From Klebsormidium nitens (lineage: Eukaryota > Plantae > Klebsormidiophyceae): 64,000 nt of DNA. Positions 40,976-63,900 of the stretch are shown in pieces. Both the position numbers and the translations under genes were made by a program. Each line of letters begins with the position of its first letter. Within the stretch, counting starts at the first letter, position 1. Location of the stretch: NCBI GenBank assembly GCA_000708835.1, contig DF237055.1:62001-126000 (forward strand), in the 5' to 3' direction. The notes beneath the pieces are model-generated. The model made no database searches. It was not told the origin of the DNA and saw only the letters and a program-made list of their open reading frames with translations.

Positions 40976-43900
40976 ATGGCCAAAAAAGTCAGCGCAAAGG
41001 CGGGCAAGCATGTGACTATAAACGTGGACCCACCTGATGACATAAGACGAAGCGGCGCCGGCCGAGATAGTCTCGCGAGCACAAAAGCCGCCCTGCGCCA
41101 GCCGCTTATCGCCCCAAAACCCCTCCGGCAGTCGAGCAGCTGTCAAATGCTCGGGGACGCTCTAGCGCAATATGTTCATTCCGACGAGGAAGACAAGGCG
41201 ACGGACTCTTCTAATTCTGATTTTGAATCCGATTTTCCTCATCCTAGTTCTAGAAAGAAATCCAATGGAGTAGACCCAGAAGCAAGCCAAAAGAGGCGCC
41301 TTCTCAGGGCCCGCACTGCGCCCATTCTAGCGAGGGGCACGTCGATCCACAAAGTGAAGCAGAAGAAAGTAACTAGAGCGAGGGTGATGATGCTGCAAGC
41401 GGCAGTGGCGTTGCTCGTGTATCTCTTTCTTGGGATGCTGACGTATGCGCTCCAGCGGGATGAGTTTCGGGGCGTTACGACCCACCCAGTGATTGACTCA
41501 ATGTACTTTTCAATGGTCACCATGACTACCACAGGTGGGTGTACATTATTTTTTCCCTTGGGCAGAGGAAGGAACTGAAACAAGGTGAAAGTTGTCTGAG
41601 GCCTGCGCTTGTGCTAAGTGATGACTAGCCACTGGCGAAATAAAAGAGAGAGGGGATGCCACCACCTCAGTTTGCTAAGTGAGGGTGAGGTGGCTCGCTG
41701 GGAGAGGGAGGGAGGTTATATGTAGGACCTGAATATGTAATGTTTAAGGTCTCGTTGTTTAGACATACAACAAAGCCTTCTAACGTGCTTTACAAGCCAC
41801 TATTGCATGGAGCTTGCTTGGGTGTGCCTAGAAGTGACGGTCACAACCTTCATGGTGTCGCCCAGTCCGTGTTGCATCTTTGAAACCCACGGGGGTGGTA
41901 TCCACAATCCTGTAATCCTGCCTGCAAGAAATTCCAGAAGGTGGAAATCTGCACATGCATTCCTTTAAGTCAAAAGGCCGAAATGTCGAATCTCAACCTT
42001 GTTTATTCCTTCCAGGCTATGGCGACCTTGTCCCCTTCACAAAGAAAGCCAAGCTCTTCGCGTCCCTCTTCGCCTTCGCCGGTCTCGTCCTATTTGGAGT
42101 CCTCATCTCCGGCGCCGGTCACTACCTCATAGACAAACAAGAACGGCTTTTACTAGAAGCGGCCCGTAGGCGCCTCGACAGGGGCAATGAGTTTTCTGGG
42201 GGGGAGTTTACACCTGCCGATCAGGCCCCCACGGGGGAGAACAAGTACTGGAAGCTTCTGCGTGCGGGGACGTATATTGGGGGGGCTTTGGCAACAGGGA
42301 TGATAGTGTTGATGAAAGTGGAGGGCATGGACTGGGTTGACGCACTTTACTGCGCGTGCGTGTCGGTGTCATCAATTGGGTAAGAGTTCCTTAAGTGAAA
42401 CGTTTTTCAGATGTTAGCAGTTGGAGCTTGGCACTTGCATACTCGAGAGCAACCTGCACTTCGAGGAAAAGTTGAGGTTTTTTTCCCACTTGCGGACAGC
42501 TTTCTTGTTGGTAAGTGTCCAATGTCCTCTGCTTGCAAACAGTGACTCAGGTGCCTGAGCAACCTGTGAGCCTTGTCAAACATAGCTGAACCTTTCACGA
42601 AGCTCGTGACCTTCGTTTCTGCTCCCGCTGGAGTTACTCCGGCAGCTCGTGTGGAGTTTTCAGATCAAGATTTACACGGTCGATGCTTGTGATGCAAAGC
42701 TTGCGACGTCCTCCGTTTAAAATCGATCAACATACACCTTCCAACCTCGTACTTTGCCCAGCATGTGTGCCGCTCTGGGACGCCAACCGGGCTTTCAAAG
42801 CTTTCCGGACAGTTTCTGATGCACATGCCGACACTCTGCAAATCGTTCTCCCCAAGCGACGAGACAACATGTGAACTTCGTGGTTATTGGGTGCGCCGAA
42901 GCTTTGCTTGAGTCGGCTGTTTTGATGTTGAAAGCAGTTGTCCATTTGTCCGTTCCTTTTGACATCCGCAAACGTGGAGCTTTCACTCGAGATTCGGACT
43001 GATCAAAACCGATACGAGTCCCTTGAGGACTACTTGCTTGGTTTCCCCTCGGTCCTTTGTCCGCGGGTCGGTGATCAGAGGCCTTCGGACGCCGTTGAAA
43101 TGTTCCTTCAGACGTCTCCGCTACTTCTCAAAATGTGGTCGGACACCCGTCACTTTTCGGACACCTTGTACCTTCGCTGAGGACTCCAGCGCTTTGTGCC
43201 GTTTCCACTTTTGCATGGGTGTCCGCAGCTGCGGCGATTAGAAGTTCTGGACGTCATTTGGGCGCTTCTTTGTTCGTTCTGGCTGCCGCTGAGAATCTTT
43301 CGGAACACGGTCTGACACTGCATTGCAATCTGTTGCATGGTGTCCGCAGGTACGGCGACCGGAGCTTTTGGACGTCGTTCGGACGCCTGTTTGCGACGTT
43401 TTGGTTGCTGCTGAGCGACTTTGGGTACGCGATTGGACACTTCGTCTCCAATTAATGGATTTACCTTGTTGTCAAGTCTTCCCTTCGGTGTCCACAGGTA
43501 CGGCGACCGGAGCTTTCGGACGCCGTTCGGACGCCTCTTTGCGACGTTCTGGCTGCTGCTGAGCGTTCTGACGGTGGCCAAGTCGATCACGCTGATCGCG
43601 GAGGCGCGTCTTGAGTCCCGCCAGAAAAAGTTCGTCAAGGAAGTGCTCTGCAAGGGGCTCACGAGCACCGACTTCCAGGCGGCCGACATTGACAACGACG
43701 GGACTGTTGGGTGAGCGAGATCCTGATTCGTAAACCCTGGAAGACTTCAATACAGGTTTACTGGGCCTTTATGAAGTTCTTCCAATTTCAGGGCTTCAAA
43801 AATCTGTTCGATTCAAGTGATTTTGGAAGCAGGAAGTTCGGCTCTCAAGCAGCGGAAGTCAAATGCTCGGATGATGTAGTGGACGAACCTGGATCGAAAA

Positions 43901-44453: not shown

Positions 44454-46275
44454 TTCACGAGTAGAGACTGTACAGAGCACAAGTTTTCCAAGGTAGATTC
44501 TTCTTGGGTTGCTTTTGGTAGAAGACCTCCGGCGATCTCCGTAGGTTTGACCAGATGTTGAGGAGTTGACAGAAAAAGTTCGCCTCGAGTGCATTGGGAG
44601 AACCATTGTTTCCCGAGGCATTTGAGTTCTGAAAAGACTCGCGTATTTATGACCAGGTTTGTAAATTTAGGTTAAAGGAAGGTCACCTAGGTGCAGGTTC
44701 TTGAGTTCTAATCCAAAAGAAGCCAGGTAAAACTTGTAGAGAGCACGAGACGCGCTTGTTGGCAATCAAGTCGATCTGTCAAGTGAACTGCCGTGGACCC
44801 TGAATCTGCTGATTTTGAAACGGGTATACCATATCGGCAGCACGGAAATTTTGTCGGGCAGCACGGAAATTTTGTCGTTGAGACGAAACCCGATCTGAAA
44901 CGCTTCCTTTAACCAACCAGAGTTCTGCTAGACGCAAATCTCTGACCGAGTTGGTGGCAGCAATCAGCGGCATTCAATTGAGACGGCCCAAGCACGTGTG
45001 ATGCGCGTGCAGACCTAGCTTTTCTTGGAAGTTGTCCGCGACTTGTCCGAACAGTGCCTCTGCATGTGGTAAACTTAACATGCTCCGGCGCCGTTGGCGG
45101 CCGCCGCCGTTCGATATGTTGCATGCACGAGAATTTGAATGCGAGAGCTAGCGACTCGGACAATTAACATTGAACACCGTCACACGTACATGACTCCATT
45201 GTTGAATCGGAATGATCCGGGCGGCACGGATCTGCGGTCGATCAGTTGCAGGTATATACGTGACTTGCCGGCCATGATTCATTATACTGCGATGGCGGGC
45301 CATGACTCATGATGCATGATATCGATCGACTCGATGCCGGCCAAAGCTAGTCTATGGTTTGACTGCAAAGTCCGACTACATTGCAAATCCTGTCGATCGA
45401 TCATGCATCAAACGAGAACGCGCGATGTTTGATGGTCTCTTTTCACACGCCGACGTAGCCAGTGCGGCCATGAGCTTCTCATGGCATACAATATTTGTGA
45501 TTGTTGTGTTGCCCATGCAACACATTTGATTGCAAACCGTACGCGTTTCAGACTGCTCGCGGCCGCCGCCGGCCTTCCTCATGCAAGTTATTGCTGCCTG
45601 CGGGTTTCTTGATCTTGACAACCGAATTGTGAATGTTGAACCGATTATATAGACTCAGCTAACATCGCTTCTGAAGTCAATTGTACATTTTGAGCTAGTA
45701 CGTACGATTCCAAAGCGGCCGCCTGCATGGTACTCACAAGATCGATTTGCATGGTTACGTACGGATACCTCATGCAATCATTTCATTAGTACACCAAATG
45801 ATCGACGACCGTCGTGTATCTAGAAAGGATATAATGGTAATATGACGAAAGTGTCAGCACGACAGAACTTTAAATCTAGCGGCCTGCGTCGCTCATCTTT
45901 GAATCGGCTCCAGATGCGTATGCAAGTGAGACAGGTTTACAAGCAAGCGTAAGCCGGGGGCGCCAATGCGGGGGCCCCTTGCGAAAGCGCCTCCACGAGA
46001 GCATGCTTGTCCCATTAAGTAGTTCCATGAAACACCCAACATGGCGGTGCACTGGATGATCATCCTCTTGTCTTAAGAGAAACGAGGCCGGGTATCCGGC
46101 TTCGGTTCACTCTAAGATAGGTTCCTTTCAGCGATCACGTTCAAGGACATTCGGTTGATTCCCTTATAACGAACAGAGTATAAGTACCGTCAGTATCCGA
46201 TCGGCGAGAGACCACCTTGAATGGACTGCTTCAAGCAGAGCTACTGCAAACGCGGGTCAGTTTTGTCTGGAGCTC

Positions 46276-46280
46276 AAAAA
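46276..46280 (-). terminator. Pol III oligo-T terminator (TTTTT) of the tRNA-like RNA gene
   Basis: The minus strand reads ...CAGCTCCA-CACGTGGCCC-TTTTT, so T5 begins after a 10-nt trailer following the discriminator. Confidence 0.75.
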
Positions 46281-46290
46281 GGGCCACGTG

Positions 46291-46627
46291 TGGAGCTGGC
46301 GGGAATCGAACCCGCGTCTCTCACTCGAAAGGCAACCCTGGTTGAGGTGCCGCGCAGCACGGTCGCAGGTCAGTTATCCGGTCGCCCTCCAAGCAGCGGA
46401 AGCCAGAGCGGATTCGAGGGACCGGAAAGGTCCCCCCCGGTGTGTCAGAAGTGCGCATCTTCCTAGCTCCCCGCGCTGGGTGGGGGTTTCCGGGTTAGTC
46501 CTGGGTTAACATCGGTTAGTGGTTAGTGGTTAGTAATAACTGCCTGCGACACTGCAACGGCCCTGCCTTTGAGTAAGCTCCCCGGCGAGGCCCCCGAGTT
46601 GGCACTCTGCCACTGAGTTACAGCCCC
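46291..46627 (-). ncRNA. 337-nt tRNA(Ala)-like / tmRNA-architecture Pol III RNA with no anticodon and a ~250-nt structured insertion
   Basis: Acceptor stem GGGGCTG/CAGCTCC with G3-U70 and discriminator A; D arm ACTC-AGTGGCA-GAGT; T arm GCGGG-TTCGATT-CCCGC. Long-range helices CTTACTC-AAAGGCAG/TTGCCTTT-C-GAGTGAG and GTCGCAGG-CAGTTAT/ATAACTG-A-CCTGCGAC. Flanked by TATA/USE-like elements upstream and T5 downstream. Confidence 0.85.
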
Positions 46628-46657
46628 GAAACAACCAGATTTGCTTACCGATACTAC

Positions 46658-46697
46658 TTATAAAAGGTCATAGAAAGGCGGAAGAAAGTTGTGGGTC
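46658..46697 (-). promoter_or_regulatory. Upstream Pol III promoter elements: TATA (TTTTATAA, 46665-46658) and USE-like GACCCACAAC (46697-46688)
   Basis: TATA lies ~31-38 nt upstream of G1. The USE-like motif (plant USE RTCCCACATCG) lies 22 nt further upstream, close to the plant Pol III spacing. Confidence 0.6.
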
Positions 46698-49600
46698 ACC
46701 CAAGATGCGATTCGACCCGTCGATCGAGCATGTAGCAATGGCATGCACGAAGGGAGCGGTAGATCAACCCACAAGCCGAGATGCGTGCGCGATAATCGAG
46801 CCGAGCTGCGAAAGAAGCTGCAGAATGTTCAAGCGGCTCGGCCCAAAATTGCGGTAGTTCTGCACTTTCTCTCCCTTTGACGGCACTCGTTTCGGATTCG
46901 GTTCTGGATGTCCCCGAAGACCCTACAACGTAAGGTTAGGTGCACTGGCGAAAGAGTTCAGTAAAACTTCCTTGCATTCTCGAAGCAGATCTCAGCACGT
47001 AGATCAAACCCAGCTTCTACGAACTGGGACTCCAGATAATTAAGGACCTCAGGAAGGATCTTCACCTGCTCTGTTGATTGGGGCAGGCGCGCAGATTTGG
47101 TTGCGATGTTGCAGCTGCCAATCAATTCTCAAAGTCCAGCATGCCAGTAGTGCAAGATTATGATGGTAATATGTTGGTTGCATCTTCTACTCTCATCGAA
47201 TCATCGAATCGGTCCACCCTAATTAGGGCATGCATTGATTCGAGACAATACCTAATGACCCGTCAAGTCGAGCGACAGGCCCCCTGACATCGAGATGACA
47301 GATGTAAATTAGACGAGGGCTGCCTAGCAAGTTGTATAAGTTAGCTTAGCAGTTTCAGAACTGGAGTTTAAAAGATGCATCGAGGGCGCATCAACTGACA
47401 AGTCGAATTTCGAATTTCGAATTTCGAGCTTAGAAATAGCTTCTGAGAAAAAGAGCTTATCATGATGCTTTCTTATATACAAACGGTAAATATATGCTCG
47501 AAGGTGATAGTAGCTCGATCCAGCAGTCTAGTGGTACTGAAGCATTGGCAGTCTTTGCTCAAGCGGCAACATGATCCACCAATCTCCGTAGAATGTCTCA
47601 GATGTCTCCGCCCTTGATCACCACGAAAAATTGAAAAAGTTCCATTCTACTTCTAAGAGTCATGGAAATCTGAAGGCCTGCTTTTGCTGGATTGAAGACG
47701 AAGAATGCTGACCAGCGATGCTTTAAGGAAGACGATTACCCACAGCAATCGAAGCTGAAGCGAGCGCAAGCCAAAGCATTTTGATCTCCATCCTAGTTGG
47801 CCGACGCTCGGCACCTTCAGCAATTCGCGAGCGCCGATCACGAGCAACCAGACCACGTCCCTTCTTGCAAAGCAAAATAGTTGAATGAAGGAAGTCTGAT
47901 TTCCCTCACCCAGACAGCGTCCTTTCGCTGAACCAAATAGGATGGCTTCAACGACGAGAGTCTCATGCAACCACATGGTTGCAGCTTTGTTCTTCGGAGC
48001 GCTTTGCTTGATCTTTGTAACGCAGAGCGTCGAGACCAACAGCAGAGGCTTCCGCATTTTCAATACCGGCTATACAAGAAGACTCCGGTTATCTGTGATC
48101 GATTACAGTAAGTAAGCTGAGTGCTTTTTAACCAAGAAGCAGCAACTATCTGTCAGAAACGATAATCAACCTAGAGCTTGGTCGACCTTCTGTTTCTTCC
48201 GCGTCATTGGCAGCTGTTATCCGCAGCTCTTTGTGCTGAACCTCAATTCACTACGGTGCCGAGTCAGAGGATTGTACGTTCTGGAGCAGCAATCAAAAAT
48301 TATCTGGCTTGTATGTCACAAATATCCGTGCATCTCACCTCACAGTAATCTAATGCAGATCCGAGCAACGTCGTTGACAATGGAACCGACATCTCAATCA
48401 AAATGGTAGGCGAATACCTCTTACTCTGCCGGTTGTCATCAAACTGATCCATTCAGCTCCGATAAGTGGCAAATGCCTACGACCTCAATGGTGCAGCTGG
48501 CTTTTGATCCCTTGAACTTGAATGAGATGGCACTGGATTCGAGAGGTTGTTTGAAAGAATTTCCCGCAATATCTCAAATCTACTGTTTCCTGCATTGCAG
48601 GATGTTGGGGGCTATGCAGCTCGCATCCACACACCAGTAAGGCGAAGGTACGGCGCGTACAGCGCCTGGCTCAAATGTCCAGGAGGTGAGGCGGTAGCAT
48701 CCGGTTGCATCGCGGAAGCAAGTATCGCTGTCACGAGACAGACAAGTAATAGTATGAAATTGTGCCGAAATTCTTTCGAAGCGTTGAAGCTGATTGTTCT
48801 AGTAATCTGCATGTAAGGAGCAGGGGTCAAGAAACGCGGCTTGACAATTTCAGACTTTGAACGTTTGTTCACCAATTGCAGGAGATACAGATGGAATAAT
48901 CTCGTGTATCTACACAAGCTCGCTGGAGGGTAGCGTTGACCAAGACGAGGCAAAGCCCCATACATCCTTACAAAATTAATTGCCACTTCGTCTGCATTAA
49001 TTGAACTGCTTTTTGGATTGACCATCAGCGCCATATTCAATGCGATTCAGAAACATGCGAAATCCTAAGGACGGACGCTATCACGGCTCGAGATTCACCG
49101 CTAGCTCTGCGCATTGGTCTTGAGCAAGCAGTGATACTGATATGATCTTACTGATCTGTGCATGCGCAACGTCCCCGATGCAATAAAGCCACGCTAGAGA
49201 AGCACACGAGTGTACGCTTGATTTGCTTCATCATCCCACTCTTCTTTCCTCGTCGCACTTCCTCAACTTCTGAGTCTGAGATGCCTTTGCAAACTGACTG
49301 TCTTCCTACTTGCAGATTGACTTTGAATTTAGGGGAATGGACAAAACCAATGTCCAAACAAACTACTTTGCCGATGGTAAGAGCCATCTTGTCAATTTTC
49401 ACTCTCTCCCGATCAGAAGACGCTCTTCGAGAAGTCTACAGCAGGTGCAGGATCCTCATTTCACATTCTCGTAACCCGATGTTCACATCTCTCGGTTTTG
49501 AATATGACTGTGATTGCTGGGACACGATCATCAGCTGATGTTACAGGATTCCTGGCTTGTTCAAAGAATTGAAATCCTTCACAATGTGGCACGCAGGTCA

Positions 49601-57900: not shown

Positions 57901-60900
57901 AATAAAGTGCCAATGAAGTGCCCCCTGCCAAGGCAGTGCTGCAAGTGGACGCAGTTTAGCAACGGCTGCGTTCAAAGAGCTAAAAAAGAAGTTTAGATCG
58001 AAGGGTTGAACCAAAGGTGAACGAGAAGCCCTCAAGCATTCAAGGTGATCAGCATCGGAGAGCGGTGAATTATGCGGGCCGTTTCCAATGAAGTGTTGTG
58101 CATGTGCTCCGAATCGCAATGCTGCCTTCAAAGTTCGAAACGATTTACGATAGGTTCGTGTGATTACCAATTTGAGATCGACTCAGGTGTAGCAAGGGAA
58201 TGGCATTGTCTCTGCCAGAGGCAACGAGAACGAGAGGACGAAATAACAGAGTAAAAGAAACGACACGAGGTTATGGTGATGTCAGGAGCATACCATGGGC
58301 GGTATGTGCACGTCCATCATCACAAATGACGGCTCCAAGATCTGCTCCACCGCATGGGCCGTCACCTCCTGGGGGTCTGCGTCGCCAGCCGTTTCTACCC
58401 CCCCGCCAGCGCCCTCTCTCCGACTTTCCCCATCGGCGTCCGGCCTTCCGTTCGCTTCCGGAACGGAACCCTCCGGCCCCTCTAGCCGCCTCCGTTTGTT
58501 GGGGCTCGCCCTATCCCCATCAGATTCCGCTCTCAGCCCGGCGGACTCCGCCGCCGGCCCCGGACCAGATCCGTTTCCTTTCGCAACACTCGGTTTCGCG
58601 TCTCCACTACCCCCCTCACTCTTCGCTAAACCGTTCTCCTCCTTCCCGGACAAAAGCTTCCTCGCCTCTAATGCGGGTAGATTGCTGATTCGATCTAAAT
58701 CTGACGACGGGGTTAACTTTGGGGTTTTGGCGAAGGCGGGACGCGGCTGCCAGAGCCCAGTGGTGTCGTCCCGGGTGTAAATTTGCGGGGGGCCGTACCA
58801 GTTGTGACGGTCCAGCGTCACTAGGACGGTCTGAGGAGCGAAAAGCAGATTGTCAAAAATGAGAGGTCGGTGATGAGGGTCGGTGAAAATTTCCGGGCTA
58901 CCGGTTGCTTCTGTGATTCGAAAGGAAGGCAGTCGGGCAACTTTTCTCGCAGCTTTGCAGTTATCTGTTTTGGCTAAACCCAAGAAAGCCAGATGATTCC
59001 TTAAAACTCATAAGCAATTCCGTGTTGGAAATATACGTCCATCTTCGGTGTGCAGCACCATAAGTCGGATCGGGATCGCCTCTTCTCGTAGACGGCCACT
59101 ACGCTTTCCTGCGCCGCACTCTCGAAGCCCACACCCAATCGAATGAACGCGCCAAGCACCTGCCACTGTACACGATACTCAGATTCAAAACTCCGCCACA
59201 AATCAAAACCCCGGAAAGATGGAGGCCAGAGCCCCTCCAGACTCCGCCAAAACTTCCGGGGCCTTACCTTGCCCCGGTGTCGGTCCGAGTTGGTCACAAA
59301 CTCGAGGGGCACTTTGGCGCCCGGTTGGAGCCCCCCGAGCACCTCGATGAAGGCGGCCATGTCGGGCGTCTCGCGGCTGTTGAACTTTTTGATGACGGCG
59401 TGCTTCGGGACCGCGGCGCGCGCAAGCGTGTACCCGGGCTCGGCGACGTAGACCAGCCCGCACGGGAAACGGAAGTTGCGCGCCTGGGAAGGAAACATCA
59501 ATGCTGATTCGTAAAATCAGGAAAAGTCAAAAGAACGGGTATAGGCTATGGACCGTGGTATGCGCGAAAGTGTATCCCTGCTCCGCAACATAGATCAGCC
59601 CGTGCGAGAAGCGGAAATTGCGTGTCTGATAGTACCAAGAAAATATTGGTCTCAGTCTTTCAAGGCCTCGAGATTCCTCTGTAAGACGATTTTGAACGGC
59701 GAACAGAGGATCCACAGAGATACACCATGCCTCAAAACAGCGGCGCGCAGTCGTCAAACCGTAGTCCAGCCTACAGGGGAAGCAAAATCTCCGAGAAGAA
59801 AGCAGAGTAAGGAGTTGGTACCTTTTCTACAGACTGGAAGAAACTGACCGCACCCTCGATTCCCTTCAAAGACAAGCTTCCATATGCTTTCCCATCGAGT
59901 TTCAGAGAGTGGGTGAACGAGTAATTGCGCAACCAAAACGAAGCGGAGACTACCCACCTCTGCATCCAAGAAATGCTGTCATGACAGCAAATGGAGTAAA
60001 GTTAAAATTCCTCGAATTGGGGGGCTCACCTGCTGGTAGGACAGCGGGTGTACGACCCCCCCGCTAAGCTCCAGGAACCAGTCGGGAGTGATGGAGTGCA
60101 AATTTTGGACCAGTAGCTGTGTCGTGATGGCTTGACCCCCCCGCACCACTTCGACGGAAATTCTCTTGCCCACCGAGTCGTCCAGGAGGGCCTCCAAAGC
60201 GTAGAATTGGGTTACGATCTGCAAAGGCGGAAGCGTTGCTTCAGCGAAACGGTATGCAGAAGGTTGGGAGCTTTGTGTTGTTTGACAAAAGGTATTGTTA
60301 TGTCCAACGAAAGCAGCGACTTCGGAGCGTCTTTGGAGGGCAGCATAGCTGTCCCAGAGATATTGCACTCTTTGTTACGTCATCTCCGAATCCTCGTCCC
60401 TCAACCTTTCCTACCACTGACTTTCATGGGACAAGAGTCCTTTCAGCTCAATCTCTTTTAGGTTTGAGCGGTTCTGACTATCCGGCAATGTCCAAAAAGT
60501 AGCGGCCCAGTCTTCGGCCCGCTCCAAATCCATCTCGGTGCCTCTTCACACATCTTTGAATAGCGAGGCCACACAACAAGCAAGCGGTAGAGCAAGCGAA
60601 GCCGACGGAGTAGAAGCGCACGACAAGCGACGAACTTACAAGCGCGGGCACACAACAAGTCTTCCGAAAGCCCTCTTTACCTGCCCCTCGACCCGCACGA
60701 GAACATCCCCCGTCTCTAGTTGTCCGTGAGCGGGCCCCGCTGGCACCACCGAATCGACCACCAGCATTCCTGTCTCCTGCTTCGCGGACGCCCGGACCAG
60801 GCCCTCCGTCTCGCGTCCGAGGCCCAGGCGCCGGACCTCGTCGAAACCCTTGTGGACCAGGGTGGTCTGCAGAGGCGACACGTGTCTTGGTGTGAGGGGC

Positions 60901-63900
60901 GCAGACATTTGTTTAGACAGTACTACCAACAGCAGAAAGTTTCTAAGCATTGATTGCGTGGCATTTGCATCGAAAATTCAGCGGACTGCTCAAGATGAAG
61001 CACGATCAGAAGGATTTTTCGAGGATCAGCCAAGCGTCACTTTTGACGCCTAGGTTGCAACGTCGAACTTTGTATATCACGAAATTGGACAGCGTATGAC
61101 GAAATGAGGCGAAAAGACGATATGAAGCGCAAAGATGTTTAAGCCTGATCTGTGAAATGAAGTCGGAGCAATTTCGAGGTCTTCGTATCAAACTCAGAAC
61201 ACTATCACAAAGGGAAAGAGGCAAAAACGAGAACGTCGGAGAAAGTAAAGGTCACGAGCACGATATCATGCAAGCATTGTCATATTCAGATCTGACAACG
61301 ATTGGAATTTTGAAACAACATGCCACAATCCGCTGAATCTCGGATGTATAGTTTCTACAAGCTTCCAATTAGTGGTGAGCTCTTGACCTGAAAGACTATT
61401 ATCCAACCTGCAACGTTCCCCTGGGAATCTGCGGCGCAGGCCACCCCGGCAGGGCCGTGTCCGGTCTGCTCGTTTGTAGAAACCGCAGCGCTCGGACAAC
61501 GCGTCCGAGGGGCAGAAAGAACGCCGACGCGGAAGTCGACTTGCTGCCCGCGTTCAGCGCGACCGCCTGGCCGTGGCAGTCGATGACGGGGGACCCGCTG
61601 CTCCCGCCCTTAGTGCCAGACGCGGCCTGGGGGGTTAATGCGAGGGCAGGTGAAGGCTCGGGTCAAGCAAGGGTGAATTGGAGCACGAGATTCGGAGTTA
61701 GGTGGAATGAATGTTGGTTTGGCAGCGAGGGCAGGTTAAGGCTCGAGGTAAACAAGGGTAGGTTGGAGCACGAAATCGGGGTTAGGTGGAGTAGATATAA
61801 AGTGGGCATTCAAACGAAGGTATAGCCCGAAGCTTCAAACCCGAGAATCGAGGCAAAGTGTGAAGATTGCAGGAGCCACAGCGAATGAACTCCAGAGTAG
61901 GGGAAAAACTTTGAAACATAGGGACTTATCGCTACACTCTCGAGCTCCATACGATGACCACTGTAGATTGTCAGTACCCAACCGTTCATTAAACCACCCC
62001 ACGTTCTGCGTCCAATCGAACGTGCAATCCGCAGATCGATCGTGCTCCCATTACAAAAGACTGGGAATCACGGACGTCAAGTGATGACTTGCGTTGGCAA
62101 AAGAATATGTCCATACCTGGATGTAGAAGGTGTTGAAGTCGTTGAAGCCCTCCTTCTTGTAGTGTGGGGCGTCCCGGTCCAGGCGGGCCAGCGTGCCAGC
62201 GAGAATGGACACCTGGCAGAGAGAGGGGGTTTCGGAATTTGAGGTTGTTGGAGACAGAACGAAGTAAAGATCATGTCCTTCCGCCGACTCGCCGGTTTCC
62301 AAGATTCGGATCAGAAAAATATATGCACTATCAAGTGAGTACGTCTCAATTGCTCATCTCGTTTTGGTCGTTACTTTTCTTTGTCCACTGTACGGGTGCT
62401 GTACCTGGTTGCTTGTCGCTTCTCCCCACTTGATTTGAATTTGGTGTCCTCTATCGACTGTTGAAATTTGCGTAATCTGTTTAGAGTTCAAGACAGGTGT
62501 GACCCTGACGGAGTGATTGGCTCTGGTCGGGGCGTTCCATCAAGGTGGAACGCGGCATGGAAGATCCATCAGATTCTCCTCTGCAATCGAGGAGCCATTG
62601 ATTGCAGAGGAGAAAGGGAGCACGGCATGAAGGAGATCAGCAGGGCCGCACCTTTTCTCCTGAGTCGTTCCCAACGACCCTAATTTCCAGTCCAACAGTG
62701 GCAGCTTCCGGCACGAGCGGTACCTCTTCCAGGTCCATGAACTGCACTGCTGCCGGGTCGAAGTGCATGAAGCCGAAGTCGTGAACCGGGTCCCGGTACA
62801 GCGGGTGCACCGGGATCTCTTCACGATCCAGGAAGACAGCCTCTGCCACGACGGGGCCTGGGAAAATCCAAGAAATGGCATAAGGATATAATTTTTAAAA
62901 AAGAGTGAGTATTGATAGAAATAAGTACGGAGGGACTTTGATAGAGGGACTTTCATGGTCCACCGGGTGCGCTGGGATCTCCTCGCGATCCTAGAAGTAG
63001 GCCTCTGCTATGGCGGGGCCTGGGGCGGGGCCTGGAAAGAGGACAACTAGCATGGGTTTCTCTCCTGGTGGAAGGGGAGGTGAGAAGGGGTCACTGAATC
63101 GGAGAATGTCCAGTACAGGGGTGCACCGGCGTCCCCATACGGTTGAGAAAGACACCCTCTGCCACGAACCCCCGGGGGAAAACAAGAACTAGCATCAAGA
63201 TAGTACCGGTTGACAACTGGAGATTTGAGAGGAAAACGTTTGAAGAGACTTAATGAAGGGGGACGCGGGATCTCGTTGCGGGCCAAGAAGACGGCCTCTG
63301 CAACGACGGGACTGGGGAAGTATACTGCAGCACTGGTTGAGAAGTGGTCTTTGAGAGGGAAGGTTTCAGGGGACTTTTAGGGTCCAGCGGGTGCGCCGTA
63401 CTCTTCTTACAACAGGACACAACTCCAGATCAACAGAACAGAAGCAAGACTTTCTTTGATTCCAGCAAAGAACTTAGCCAACTGCCACGACAGTGGCTGC
63501 TGTGACATCAAGGGTTGTCTGGCAGTGAGGGTTCAGTGACCTCGAATACCCCTGATTGCTACATCTGGATTTGCAGATCTGCAGGTCGTTCTTGGCTGTA
63601 ACTTTTAGCCTCTCCTCCATCAAATCATATGTTTTCAAAGTTATTGGCTGCCAGCCAGCACCTCCAAGTCCCGTTTAGTAGGCATCCATGATCCTGGATC
63701 TTCCAGCGGCGGAAGTGTTTCGTTGGCAAGTCAAGTACTTAAAAGTGCCTGGAGTATAATCACATCCTTGTCCATCAGCTACTATGTGTTCTTCGCATCG
63801 ATTGCCAGTATATCGGGCAAGCCATATTCTCCATTTCGCAGCCGGTGTGGCTCCAAACGGTGTATCAGTGCCTCTTTGCTGCACTCTTGATGACCGACCT

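What the first reader, a model, noticed from the sequence alone, without database searches (positions are those of the whole stretch)
46291..46627. Candidate new RNA class: nuclear Pol III alanine-tRNA-mimic RNA with tmRNA-like architecture
Seen in sequence: the 5' and 3' ends form a complete tRNA elbow. The acceptor stem is GGGGCUG/CAGCUCC with G3-U70 and A73, the D stem uses an A10-U25 pair where tRNAs usually have G-C, and the T arm is canonical. No CCA is encoded. The anticodon-stem position is taken by UUACU/AGUGA, followed by a GAGAC variable loop. Instead of closing a 7-nt loop it extends as an irregular ~40-bp rod (46577-46563 with 46335-46320; 46550-46536 with 46377-46362) into a ~160-nt domain. 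There is no U33 and no NGC anticodon, and there is an extra 26-nt segment after the D arm. Established knowledge: AlaRS recognises G3-U70 without reading the anticodon, and bacterial tmRNA has this TLD-plus-long-helix layout. From memory, E. coli ssrA starts GGGGCUG and ends GACGCGGGUUCAACUCCCGCCAGCUCCA, nearly identical to this end. Inference: an aminoacylatable, non-decoding nuclear RNA, possibly a eukaryotic ribosome-rescue or regulatory tRNA mimic. It is not a SINE, because the B box is at the far 3' end and the acceptor stem is intact. It does not look bacterial, given the D arm/A box, TATA and T5.
Basis: partly seen in the sequence, partly recalled or inferred. Interest (0 to 1): 0.95.

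Follow-up and report, generated by a model that had tools for sequence, protein, structure and literature searches.

The report
Anticodon-less alanine-tRNA-bodied Pol III RNA
This is a real, conserved, probably expressed 337-base RNA gene in a streptophyte alga. A complete alanine-tRNA body carries a 260-base structured domain in place of the anticodon loop. It is an undescribed kind of tRNA-derived RNA, not a eukaryotic tmRNA.

Summary
On the minus strand, 46627-46291 encodes a 337-nt RNA. Its ends form a full tRNA-Ala body: a 7-bp acceptor stem with G3-U70 and A73, a D arm with A10-U25, and a canonical T arm. Every universal tertiary-contact base is in place. No CCA and no anticodon loop are encoded. 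A long rod and a roughly 160-nt domain sit where the anticodon arm should be.

New here:
- An snRNA-type Pol III promoter lies upstream (USE ACCCACAA, about 22 nt, TATA), and a T5 terminator lies downstream.
- Four other organisms carry the orthologous locus. The tRNA parts are invariant, while the upstream spacer differs at 26% of sites.
- A probable RNA library of one relative holds a contig made of the gene's interior only.
- The interior is single copy, but the tRNA ends are shared by about 5-25 loci. This is a small gene family, not a SINE.

It fails tmRNA membership. Only the last 28-33 nt match, there is a true D stem, and there is no tag frame. Klebsormidiophyceae are also reported to lack SmpB.

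Best reading: the tRNA-Ala body is a chassis for transcription, processing and perhaps charging. Its cargo domain shows four CURAC (branch-point/STAR-site-like) motifs in an open loop. The function is inferred, not shown.

This scan has already met the same family on other DNA of this genome (s1-277596).

The parts
46291..46627 (-). Whole predicted mature RNA, 337 nt, from G1 at 46627 to discriminator A73 at 46291
   Evidence: Sequence. ARAGORN with introns allowed recognises the tRNA frame over 46290-46627. The fold has z -3.2. The orthologous locus is present in organisms B, C, D and E.
46621..46627 (-). Acceptor stem, 5' strand GGGGCUG (G3 of the G3-U70 pair)
   Evidence: It pairs 7/7 with 46292-46298. 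There are no changes in any of the five sequences.
46604..46618 (-). D arm ACUC-AGUGGCA-GAGU (A10-U25, G18 G19). It contains the A box TAACTCAGTGG, a 10/11 match to the consensus
   Evidence: The first 27 nt are identical to an ordinary phage tRNA-Ala(UGC) in L124.
46578..46603 (-). G26 plus a 25-nt extra segment. It either forms a small hairpin (gene 30-47) or is the 5' strand GCCAACUC of an alternative anticodon-stem-like helix
   Evidence: Constrained folds. Paralogue ends in relatives carry GUUGGC or GAGUUGG, which are complementary to this segment.
46536..46577 (-). 5' strand of the long irregular rod (gene 51-92)
   Evidence: Minimum-free-energy and constrained folds. The distal part, gene 64-92 with 251-283, is predicted in all five orthologous sequences.
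46494..46535 (-). Open loop with three tandem ACUAACC heptads and a fourth ACUAAC, i.e. four CURAC motifs. UAA stop codons fall in all three frames
   Evidence: This is the most variable segment (16 of 42 columns), yet all five sequences keep four CURAC motifs. In a simulation, 10 neutral substitutions all spare the motifs with probability about 0.005, but the motif was defined post hoc.
46378..46493 (-). Structured core of the insert (gene 135-250), including the hairpin GGGACC-UUUCC-GGUCCC
   Evidence: Folds. 14 of 116 columns vary. Several changes keep pairs through G-U.
46320..46377 (-). 3' strand of the rod (gene 251-308), ending in AGUGA(G)
46316..46320 (-). Variable loop GAGAC (G46, C48)
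   Evidence: Sequence. G15-C48 and C13-G22-G46 are possible, as in canonical tRNAs.
46299..46315 (-). T arm GCGGG-UUCGAUU-CCCGC. It contains the B box GGTTCGATTCC, an exact match
   Evidence: Invariant in the orthologues.
46291..46298 (-). Acceptor stem 3' strand CAGCUCC (U70) plus discriminator A73. No CCA is encoded
   Evidence: Together with the T arm and GAC it forms the 28-mer identical to bacterial tmRNA 3' ends.
46276..46280 (-). T5 Pol III terminator, 11 nt past A73
   Evidence: Sequence. Unchanged in organisms B and D. Paralogues in relatives also run into T tracts directly after their 3' ends.
46658..46665 (-). TATA element TTTTATAA, about -31 to -38
   Evidence: TTTATAA is kept in organism D even though the adjacent bases changed.
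46689..46696 (-). USE-like element ACCCACAA, about -62 to -69, 21-24 nt upstream of the TATA
   Evidence: It matches the algal USE consensus ACCCAYAW listed in PMC8287931. The USE-spacer-TATA pattern occurs once in the 64 kb, here, against 0.06 expected. A USE-TATA spacing of 23-24 bp marks Pol III in Arabidopsis.

Best explanation
This is a functional, non-decoding RNA gene derived from a nuclear-type tRNA-Ala gene. It is one member of a small Klebsormidium family that shares the tRNA ends but carries different inserts.

Inferred from sequence signals: RNA polymerase III transcribes it from a hybrid promoter. The promoter combines an upstream snRNA-type USE and TATA with the internal A and B boxes, and transcription stops at the T5 run.

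Inferred from established tRNA biology: the intact acceptor/T-arm/D-arm elbow lets RNase P and RNase Z trim the ends and lets the CCA-adding enzyme finish the RNA. The elbow also gives a stable L-shaped handle. AlaRS reads G3-U70 and not the anticodon, so the RNA could still be alanylated. It could therefore pass the checkpoints that recognise charged tRNAs.

The working part is the cargo. A rod of about 40 bp holds out a single-stranded loop of about 42 nt with four CURAC motifs, next to a structured core of about 115 nt. CURAC is the branch-point / SF1-STAR binding-site consensus.

My preferred, weakly supported mechanism is that this loop acts as a binding platform or decoy for a branch-point-binding (KH/STAR) protein or for U2 snRNA.

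The RNA is not a tmRNA homologue and does not work by trans-translation.
For: tRNA body:
- The tRNA body is complete, with all universal tertiary-contact positions.
- ARAGORN recognises the frame once a long insert is allowed.
- The first 27 nt and the acceptor 3' strand equal those of an ordinary tRNA-Ala(UGC).

Promoter and terminator:
- The USE-(15-30 nt)-TATA pattern occurs only once in the 64 kb, directly upstream of the gene, against 0.06 expected.
- The spacing fits the Pol III rule. The T5 terminator follows.

Conservation:
- The orthologous locus is present in four other organisms at about 93-96% identity.
- No column varies in the 54 tRNA-body nt. The upstream spacer has 11 changes in 42 nt in organism D (Fisher p = 5e-5 against the tRNA parts, 7e-6 against the whole gene).
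- The TATA and T5 are kept.

Expression:
- A probable RNA library of organism C holds a 215-nt contig at depth 7.35 that lies wholly inside the gene. The flanks have depth 0, although the downstream flank is well conserved in organisms B and D.

Family:
- The interior has about 1x depth. The 3' module has about 7-25x and the 5' module about 4x.
- Paralogue contigs diverge into unrelated inserts and end in T tracts.

Structure and motifs:
- Eight substitutions in predicted helices keep pairing through G-U.
- All five sequences keep four CURAC motifs in the fastest-evolving segment.
Against: - No RNA contig of the window's own organism holds the gene (share 0.00 in all listed runs). Most are probably poly(A) libraries.
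- Expression rests on one contig from a relative, in a library whose RNA label is itself a guess.
- There are no double compensatory changes, and 5-6 substitutions break predicted pairs. The species are too close for a covariation test.
- The body-rod junction has at least three competing pairings.
- Depletion of substitutions inside the CURAC cores is not significant on its own (p = 0.09). The motif was widened post hoc from CUAAC to CURAC. The same changes equally preserve UAA/UGA stop codons.
- Invariant tRNA ends could reflect gene conversion within the family rather than selection on this copy.
- Downstream DNA is as conserved as the gene, so conservation is not unique to the gene.
Confidence: 0.6

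Rival explanations
1. A eukaryotic tmRNA analogue or a transferred ssrA. The alanylated RNA would enter stalled ribosomes, in the cytosol or after import into the plastid, and supply stop codons in all three frames to end non-stop translation.
For: - G3-U70 and A73 are present.
- The 5' 7 nt and the 3' 28 nt are identical to many bacterial tmRNAs, and in prokaryotes that 28-mer is found only in tmRNA genes.
- The architecture of tRNA-like domain plus long helix is the same.
- The open loop keeps UAA/UGA in three frames in all five sequences.
- Plastid ssrA was ancestral in streptophytes, and Klebsormidium plastids are inferred to import tRNAs.
Against: - The Rfam tmRNA model scores 34.8 bits against a 47-bit cut-off and aligns only the 3' end.
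- ARAGORN in tmRNA mode finds nothing even at lowered thresholds.
- BLAST against 120 tmRNA loci matches only gene positions 305-337.
- It has a true 4-bp D stem with an A box where tmRNAs have an unpaired D-loop analogue.
- The only Ala-start frame, GCA GGC AGU UAU UAC UAA, lies inside the rod helix.
- Klebsormidiophyceae are reported to lack SmpB as well as ssrA.
- The 5' half equals an ordinary tRNA-Ala.
Confidence: 0.05
2. A dead or neutral tRNA-Ala pseudogene whose anticodon arm was destroyed by an insertion. It looks conserved only because the compared species are close and the family homogenises its ends by gene conversion.
For: - There is no anticodon, and the junction is ambiguous.
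- There are no compensatory double changes.
- No RNA contig was found in the window's own organism.
- Plant and algal genomes hold many tRNA-like sequences of unknown status.
Against: - It has a dedicated USE+TATA promoter at the right spacing and a kept terminator.
- All tertiary-contact bases are intact.
- The interior diverges 3-4%, against 16-26% in the upstream spacer.
- An RNA-library contig is confined to the gene in a relative.
- Several paralogues with different inserts keep the same ends and T-run terminators in at least two species.
Confidence: 0.12
3. A tRNA gene with a giant intron. The roughly 256-nt insert would be cut out by the tRNA splicing endonuclease. That would yield either a decoding tRNA or, more plausibly, a stable linear or circular intron RNA (tricRNA-like) that is the real product.
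For: - ARAGORN with introns allowed reports a tRNA with a 256-nt intron at the 37/38 position.
- About 34% of K. nitens tRNA genes are reported to contain introns.
- Two bulge-helix-bulge-like arrangements can be drawn.
Against: - The forced model has a Pro anticodon (CGG) on an alanine acceptor, no position 26, a C-C mismatch in the stem and a class-II-like variable arm. It is not a credible decoder.
- The BHB-like hits are G-U-rich or compete with the rod, and are expected by chance in such a self-complementary RNA.
- The RNA-library contig runs uninterrupted through the proposed 5' junctions.
- Published algal tRNA introns are far shorter; about 64 nt is already called unusually long.
Confidence: 0.08
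4. A mobile element: either a tRNA-derived SINE, or a MITE that landed in a tRNA gene, with the rod being its terminal inverted repeats.
For: - The rod arms read as imperfect inverted repeats.
- First-reader notes describe hairpin elements with telomere-like G-rich cores elsewhere in this genome. The plus strand of the loop is GGTTAGT-rich.
Against: - The interior has single-copy depth in organisms B and D, and there is no second copy in the window.
- The B box and acceptor sit at the 3' end rather than a SINE tail.
- No target-site duplication is evident.
- The locus is orthologous, with the same flanks, in other species.
Confidence: 0.03

Closest known systems
Bacterial and plastid tmRNA (ssrA, Rfam RF00023)
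   Same: - Alanine-type acceptor stem with G3-U70.
- Identical GGGGCUG start and identical last 28 nt.
- A tRNA-like domain closed by the two ends, with a long helix replacing the anticodon arm.
- Similar size (337 nt).
   Different: - It has a real D stem with an A box.
- It has no PK1, no resume codon or tag frame, and no pseudoknot ring.
- The score is below the Rfam cut-off.
- The context is a eukaryotic Pol III promoter and terminator.
- No CCA is encoded.
- The lineage is reported to lack SmpB.
Canonical cytosolic tRNA-Ala, and ordinary tRNA-Ala(UGC) such as the one in L124
   Same: - The first 27 nt, the acceptor pairing, A73, the D and T arms and the tertiary positions are those of a normal tRNA-Ala.
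- It has internal A and B boxes and a T-run terminator.
   Different: - There is no 7-nt anticodon loop, no U33 and no NGC anticodon.
- About 260 nt replace the loop.
- There is extra sequence at position 26 or in the variable region.
- An snRNA-type upstream promoter is present.
Pol III genes with hybrid or type-3 promoters (plant U6, 7SL, MRP, telomerase RNA; tRNA-Sec; vault RNA)
   Same: USE, then about 22 nt, then TATA, then about 30 nt, then the start site, with a T-run terminator. tRNA-Sec, 7SL and vault RNA genes also combine upstream and internal elements.
   Different: No sequence or structure match to any of these families (Rfam). There is no telomere template for the CCCTAAAA repeat.
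Other tRNA-like or tRNA-scaffolded RNAs (MALAT1 mascRNA, bacterial YrlA, gammaherpesvirus tRNA-miRNA chimeras, rodent BC1 RNA from tRNA-Ala, engineered tRNA scaffolds)
   Same: A tRNA fold is used as a processing, stability or transcription module for a non-decoding RNA.
   Different: Here the cargo sits inside the anticodon arm of an otherwise complete, potentially chargeable tRNA-Ala. The gene belongs to a nuclear family with variable inserts. The weak Rfam matches to mascRNA (15.4 bits) and YrlA (13.8 bits) cover only the T arm.
MIAT/Gomafu lncRNA with UACUAAC repeats that bind SF1
   Same: Clustered (U)ACUAAC branch-point-like motifs in an accessible region. cmscan aligned the loop to MIAT_exon5_2 through these motifs.
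   Different: The match is not significant (16.2 bits, E 0.35). MIAT is an animal Pol II lncRNA. Binding was not tested here.

Membership tests
tmRNA (RF00023) | Alanine-type acceptor stem with G3-U70, plus a T arm | tested here: met
   The acceptor and the last 28 nt are identical to ARAGORN-verified tmRNAs.
tmRNA (RF00023) | Full-length match to the family covariance model at or above its gathering score | tested here: not met
   34.8 bits against 47. Only 46288-46339 aligns, with 324 model positions skipped.
tmRNA (RF00023) | Degenerate D-loop analogue without a D stem (the SmpB-binding face) | tested here: not met
   The RNA has a 4-bp D stem and a 7-nt D loop with G18 G19. Six bacterial tmRNAs with the same ends have unrelated sequence there.
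tmRNA (RF00023) | Resume codon and tag-peptide reading frame after pseudoknot 1 | tested here: not met
   ARAGORN -m finds no tmRNA even at lowered thresholds. The only Ala-start mini-frame is buried in the rod helix.
tmRNA (RF00023) | SmpB partner encoded by the organism | not testable with these tools
   The genome could not be searched here. A preprint states that ssrA and SmpB are both absent from Klebsormidiophyceae (10.1101/2024.03.08.584070).
Decoding tRNA, with or without an intron | Cloverleaf with a 5-bp anticodon stem, a 7-nt loop, U33 and an anticodon matching the acceptor identity | tested here: not met
   ARAGORN default finds no gene. With introns allowed it gives a forced Pro(CGG) model with a 256-nt intron, a C-C mismatch and an Ala acceptor.
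Decoding tRNA, with or without an intron | Acceptor, D and T arms with the universal tertiary-contact nucleotides | tested here: met
   U8, A14, G15, G18, G19, C13-G22, G46, C48, G53-C61 and a UUCGAUU T loop are all present.
tRNA-derived SINE | Many dispersed copies sharing the tRNA-unrelated body, with a 3' tail instead of a T arm and acceptor | tested here: not met
   The interior has single-copy depth in two other species and there is no second copy in the window. The 3' end is an intact T arm and acceptor.
Type-3 / hybrid Pol III promoter genes | USE, TATA at Pol III spacing, T-run terminator | tested here: met
   ACCCACAA, 21-24 nt, TATA: the only such pattern in 64 kb. The consensus and spacing rule come from PMC8287931. 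T5 lies at 46280-46276.
Type-3 / hybrid Pol III promoter genes | Actual transcription by Pol III | not testable with these tools
   Only indirect evidence: an RNA-library contig confined to the gene in organism C.
Telomerase RNA (plant/algal, Pol III) | Template complementary to about 1.5 telomere repeats | tested here: not met
   Klebsormidium telomeres are CCCTAAAA/CCTAAAA. No such template exists in the gene. The ACUAACC heptads would specify GGTTAGT.

The most novel reading that the evidence does not exclude
The alanine identity is the point of the design. AlaRS ignores the anticodon, so a tRNA-Ala body can carry any cargo and still be charged. Klebsormidium would then have a family of aminoacylated, non-decoding RNAs.

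Their charging or AlaRS binding could be used in one of two ways:
- To deliver RNA cargo into the chloroplast. Its plastome lacks several tRNA genes, so it must import tRNAs. It has also lost ssrA.
- To act on ribosomes as an SmpB-independent rescue factor that offers stop codons in all three frames.
Probability: 0.08. Interest if true: 0.92.

Novelty: new variant of a known kind. Interest (0 to 1): 0.62.

Why it matters
tRNA-shaped modules are known to be reused by tmRNA, viral tRNA-like ends, mascRNA and engineered tRNA scaffolds. I found no report of a eukaryotic nuclear gene family that keeps a complete, potentially chargeable tRNA-Ala body while replacing the anticodon arm with large, copy-specific domains, and that has its own snRNA-type Pol III promoter.

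If the RNAs are stable and charged, three things follow:
- They would be a natural counterpart of the laboratory tRNA scaffold.
- They would be a new substrate class for AlaRS, RNase P/Z and the CCA enzyme.
- They would be a test case for how new Pol III non-coding RNAs are born from tRNA genes.

The lineage matters too. Klebsormidium sits near the base of the land-plant line. It has lost plastid ssrA/SmpB and apparently imports tRNAs into its plastid.

Tried and rejected
- ARAGORN default and Rfam at gathering thresholds found nothing.
- Rfam at E<=10 gave only the T-arm part of tmRNA plus chance hits: Plastid-ycf2, MIAT, mascRNA, YrlA.
- Telomerase RNA was considered because of the Pol III promoter and the heptad repeat. 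I rejected it because there is no CCCTAAAA-type template.
- RNase P/MRP, 7SL, U3 and snoRNAs gave no Rfam signal in 44600-47700.
- Exact-pattern scans of the family-specific 33-nt 3' end in metagenome contigs and of the 30-nt end in viral contigs found nothing.
- The 24-nt 5' end found nothing in prokaryotic genomes.
- The 21-nt 5' end found only ordinary or fragmentary tRNAs: L121/L125 Pro, L122 fragment, L123 odd tRNA-Ala, L124 tRNA-Ala.
- A second ARAGORN intron-mode hit at 60679-61516 is spurious.
- A search for the 'telomere-like core MITE' family of earlier notes in this window found no relative of the insert. The lookup of earlier findings by sequence was blank.
- The BHB splice-motif scan gave two weak hits, which I judge to be chance.
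- The attempt to confirm the organism from a window ORF failed because the ORF is not a recorded gene product.
- Covariation tools could not be applied. The orthologue sequences exist only as variant tables from read laying and were rebuilt in a script.
- Paper searches found no description of such RNAs.
Full report
**What is there.**
Read on the minus strand, 46627-46291 is a 337-nt unit.
- The first 7 nt (GGGGCUG) pair with 46298-46292 (CAGCUCC). This gives a 7-bp acceptor stem with G3-U70, followed by A73 at 46291 and then CAC. No CCA is encoded.
- U8 and A9 are followed by a 4-bp D stem (A10-U25, C-G, U-A, C-G) and a 7-nt D loop, AGUGGCA.
- The 3' side has GAGAC, then the T arm GCGGG-UUCGAUU-CCCGC.
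- Every position used for tRNA tertiary contacts is occupied as in a normal tRNA: U8, A14, G15/C48, G18, G19, C13-G22 with G46, G53-C61, and U54-U55-C56...A58.
- The 25-nt T-arm/acceptor string is unique in the window, against 0.00 expected.
- The whole RNA folds better than all 100 shuffles: -148.8 kcal/mol, z -3.2.

**What standard detectors say.**
- ARAGORN (tRNA and tmRNA modes) and Rfam at curated thresholds report nothing in the 64 kb.
- At relaxed thresholds the only meaningful Rfam hit is tmRNA. It scores 34.8 bits against a 47-bit cut-off and aligns just 46288-46339, the T arm and acceptor.
- ARAGORN with introns allowed does recognise the tRNA frame. To do so it invents a tRNA-Pro(CGG) with a 256-nt intron, a C-C mismatch, no position 26 and a long variable arm, all on an alanine acceptor. 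That is not a credible decoder.
- This result does show independently that the acceptor, D and T arms have tRNA geometry.

**The tmRNA resemblance, tested.**
- The last 28 nt occur exactly in more than 120 prokaryotic genomes of many phyla.
- Of those 120 sites, 105 lie in ARAGORN-called tmRNA genes and none lie in tRNA genes.
- Most of those tmRNAs also start GGGGCUG.
- The likeness stops there. BLAST against these loci matches only gene positions 305-337.
- Directly after the acceptor the tmRNAs have their unpaired D-loop analogue, whereas this RNA has a true D arm.
- ARAGORN's tmRNA mode finds no tag frame even at lowered thresholds.
- The one Ala-start mini-frame (GCA GGC AGU UAU UAC UAA) sits inside the rod helix.
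- By contrast, an ordinary tRNA-Ala(UGC) on a phage contig shares the first 27 nt, including A10-U25, and the acceptor 3' strand.
- The 5' half is therefore plain tRNA-Ala.
- Žárský & Eliáš (bioRxiv 10.1101/2024.03.08.584070) state that plastid ssrA is absent from Klebsormidiophyceae and that SmpB follows the same distribution.

I conclude that this RNA is tRNA-Ala-derived. I read its tmRNA-like ends as convergence on the same AlaRS and T-arm constraints, not as membership of the family.

**Genome and context.**
- An earlier follow-up note of this scan names the genome as Klebsormidium nitens (s1-273829). I could not verify this directly.
- The window is eukaryotic in character: about 50% G+C with fragmented ORFs, for example two-pore K+ channel exons at 41955-43714.
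- The RNA gene lies in a stretch of about 3 kb without long ORFs.

**Promoter and terminator (new).**
- Upstream on the gene's strand lie ACCCACAA (46696-46689) and TTTTATAA (46665-46658), 21-24 nt apart. The TATA is about 31-38 nt before G1.
- ACCCACAA fits the algal upstream sequence element consensus ACCCAYAW listed by Fajkus et al. 2021 (PMC8287931).
- From my own knowledge it also matches 8 of 11 positions of the plant USE, RTCCCACATCG.
- The same paper gives 23-24 bp USE-TATA spacing as the Pol III signature in Arabidopsis.
- The pattern USE-N(15-30)-TATAA occurs once in the whole window on either strand, here, against 0.06 expected.
- Internally, the A box matches 10 of 11 positions and the B box is exact. 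They are about 290 bp apart, which an upstream promoter would compensate for.
- A T5 run lies 11 nt past A73.

This is the layout of a hybrid type-2/type-3 Pol III gene.

**Relatives, from public runs.**
I laid Logan contigs of four runs from four other coded organisms on 46200-46700.
- Organism B has one contig spanning 46236-46664, with 23 substitutions and 8 gap letters.
- Organism D has the locus in two haplotypes.
- Organism E has two short pieces.
- Organism C's run, labelled as probable RNA, has a single 215-nt contig at depth 7.35. It covers gene positions 39-267 and nothing else. Both flanks have depth 0.
- The downstream flank is highly conserved in B and D, so its absence from the RNA library argues for a discrete transcript rather than contaminating DNA.
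- The contig probably stops where the multi-copy tRNA ends begin.
- No RNA run of the window's own organism holds the gene in its contigs. Most of those are likely poly(A) libraries, so this is weak negative evidence.

**Conservation.**
I rebuilt the five sequences from the variant table.
- The 54 nt of tRNA body show no variable column.
- The rod shows 5-10% variable columns, the core 12% and the open loop 38%.
- In organism D the upstream spacer, 46628-46669, has 11 changes in 42 nt. TTTATAA, the stretch 46670-46690 and the T5 run are unchanged.
- Gene against spacer gives Fisher p = 7e-6.
- The downstream 90 nt are as conserved as the gene (1 substitution, 3 indels). I cannot explain this.
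- In predicted helices, eight substitutions keep pairing through G-U. Five or six break pairs, and none is a double compensatory change.
- The species are too close for a real covariation test.

**Structure.**
It has a small extra hairpin after the D arm and then the rod starting at CUUACUC/GAGUGAG.
- An alternative scores -135.7 kcal/mol. It pairs GCCAACUC (right after the D arm) with GGGUUGCC and leaves a class-II-like variable hairpin.
- In the orthologues, two substitutions weaken the proximal rod. A289C extends the alternative helix, and the preferred junction changes from species to species.
- Paralogue ends in relatives carry GUUGGC or GAGUUGG just before UGAGAGAC. These are complementary to the 5' GCCAAC(UC), which suggests that the alternative helix is the ancestral closing stem of the family.
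- The distal rod (gene 64-92 with 251-283) and the hairpins of the core are predicted in all five sequences.
- The junction is therefore unresolved, but the overall architecture of elbow, long rod and domain is robust.

**A family, not a repeat.**
- In organism D the interior has single-copy depth, about 100 summed over two haplotypes against 64-71 in the flanks.
- The T-arm/acceptor region reaches 1110-1780, the stretch to 46327 about 520, and the 5' module about 270.
- Organism B shows at least five separate contigs sharing 46291-46323/46327.
- These contigs run on into unrelated sequences on the insert side and into T tracts on the 3' side.
- So about 5-7 loci share the body including UGAGAGAC, and perhaps 25 share the T arm and acceptor. 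Some of the latter may be ordinary tRNA-Ala genes.
- Each locus has its own insert and its own terminator.
- There is no other copy in this window.
- This matches first-reader notes on other pieces of the genome (s1-299318, s1-305612, s1-305453, s1-305451, s1-277694, s1-277669).
- It also matches an earlier follow-up report (s1-277596), which reached the same family-level reading for two genes with 107- and 170-nt inserts.
- That report is not independent evidence. My own support is the depth and loose-end pattern.

**The cargo.**
- The rod opens into a single-stranded loop of about 42 nt: UU-ACUAACC-ACUAACC-ACUAACC, a spacer, then GACUAAC.
- This is the fastest-changing part, with 10 substitution events and a 10-nt deletion across the four relatives.
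- Even so, every sequence keeps four CURAC motifs.
- The two hits inside motif cores are both A-to-G at the R position.
- Ten random single substitutions would all spare the motifs with probability about 0.005. However, I widened the motif from CUAAC to CURAC after seeing the data.
- The simple depletion of core hits is not significant (p = 0.09).
- (U)ACUAAC is the branch-point sequence, which pairs with U2 snRNA GUAGUA. It is also the binding site of SF1 and STAR/KH proteins (established knowledge).
- cmscan even aligned the loop to the SF1-binding repeats of MIAT, though not significantly.
- The same changes also preserve UAA/UGA in all three frames, so the data cannot separate a protein- or snRNA-binding platform from the stop-codon reading.

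**Most likely mechanism.**
Shown by sequence and comparison:
- A conserved tRNA-Ala body.
- Pol III signals.
- A single-copy conserved insert.
- A family of such genes.
- A likely transcript in a relative.

Inferred from tRNA biology:
- Pol III transcription.
- RNase P and RNase Z trimming, and CCA addition.
- An L-shaped handle.
- Possible alanylation, because AlaRS needs only G3-U70.

Speculative:
- The loop is a decoy or platform for branch-point-binding factors.

**Rivals.**
- Neutral pseudogene: 0.12.
- Giant-intron or excised (circular) RNA: 0.08.
- tmRNA analogue: 0.05.
- Mobile element: 0.03.

The most novel reading still open is that charging itself is functional. One version is import of cargo into the chloroplast, which Lemieux et al. 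2016 (PMC4877394) infer must import cytosolic tRNAs in Klebsormidium.

**Novelty.**
I found no paper describing such RNAs. I rate it a new variant of a known kind: a tRNA-derived, tRNA-scaffolded Pol III non-coding RNA. It is not a new member of the tmRNA family.

Noticed in passing
L123:1315-1370 (metagenome contig Ga0114994_10128719): CAGCTCCA, 7 nt, then a tRNA-Ala(UGC) 5' half (first 25 nt identical to the window RNA), ending in the anticodon loop and followed by a T run. A T-arm-like GGGGTTCGAT lies about 80 nt upstream. It looks like a permuted and/or multi-intron tRNA-Ala gene of an AT-rich eukaryote. ARAGORN calls nothing.
   Followed up: partly
L124:2047-2119 (IMG/VR phage contig): An ordinary tRNA-Ala(UGC) in a phage tRNA cluster shares the first 27 nt and the acceptor 3' strand with the window RNA. 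This shows that A10-U25 with GGGGCUG/CAGCUCC is a normal tRNA-Ala layout.
   Followed up: yes
window 46201-46290: The 90 nt downstream of the RNA gene are as conserved between species as the gene itself: 1 substitution and 3 indels in organism D. No ORF and no Rfam match. Unexplained.
   Followed up: partly
window 41955-43714: Exons of a two-pore K+ channel-like gene (GYGD filter, EF-hand-like DIDNDGTV). A 121/148-bp tandem repeat block at 43218-43565 lies inside or next to them.
   Followed up: no
window 44836-44877: An exact 21-bp tandem duplication, GGCAGCACGGAAATTTTGTCG x2.
   Followed up: no
window 46543-46559 with 46353-46369 (gene 69-85 / 259-275): A bulge-helix-bulge-like arrangement (3-nt bulge, 4 bp, 3-nt bulge) can be drawn inside the rod. 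It competes with the minimum-free-energy pairing and is probably chance.
   Followed up: partly
window 60679-61516: ARAGORN in intron mode reports a 'tRNA-Arg with a 749-nt intron'. The drawn structure is poor and the region looks coding. Judged spurious.
   Followed up: yes
window 46494-46535, plus strand: The plus strand of the loop reads as a G-rich telomere-like tract (GGTTAGT x3, GGGTTAG). First-reader notes describe hairpin elements with a conserved telomere-like core and unrelated arms elsewhere in this genome. A link to this RNA family could not be tested.
   Followed up: partly
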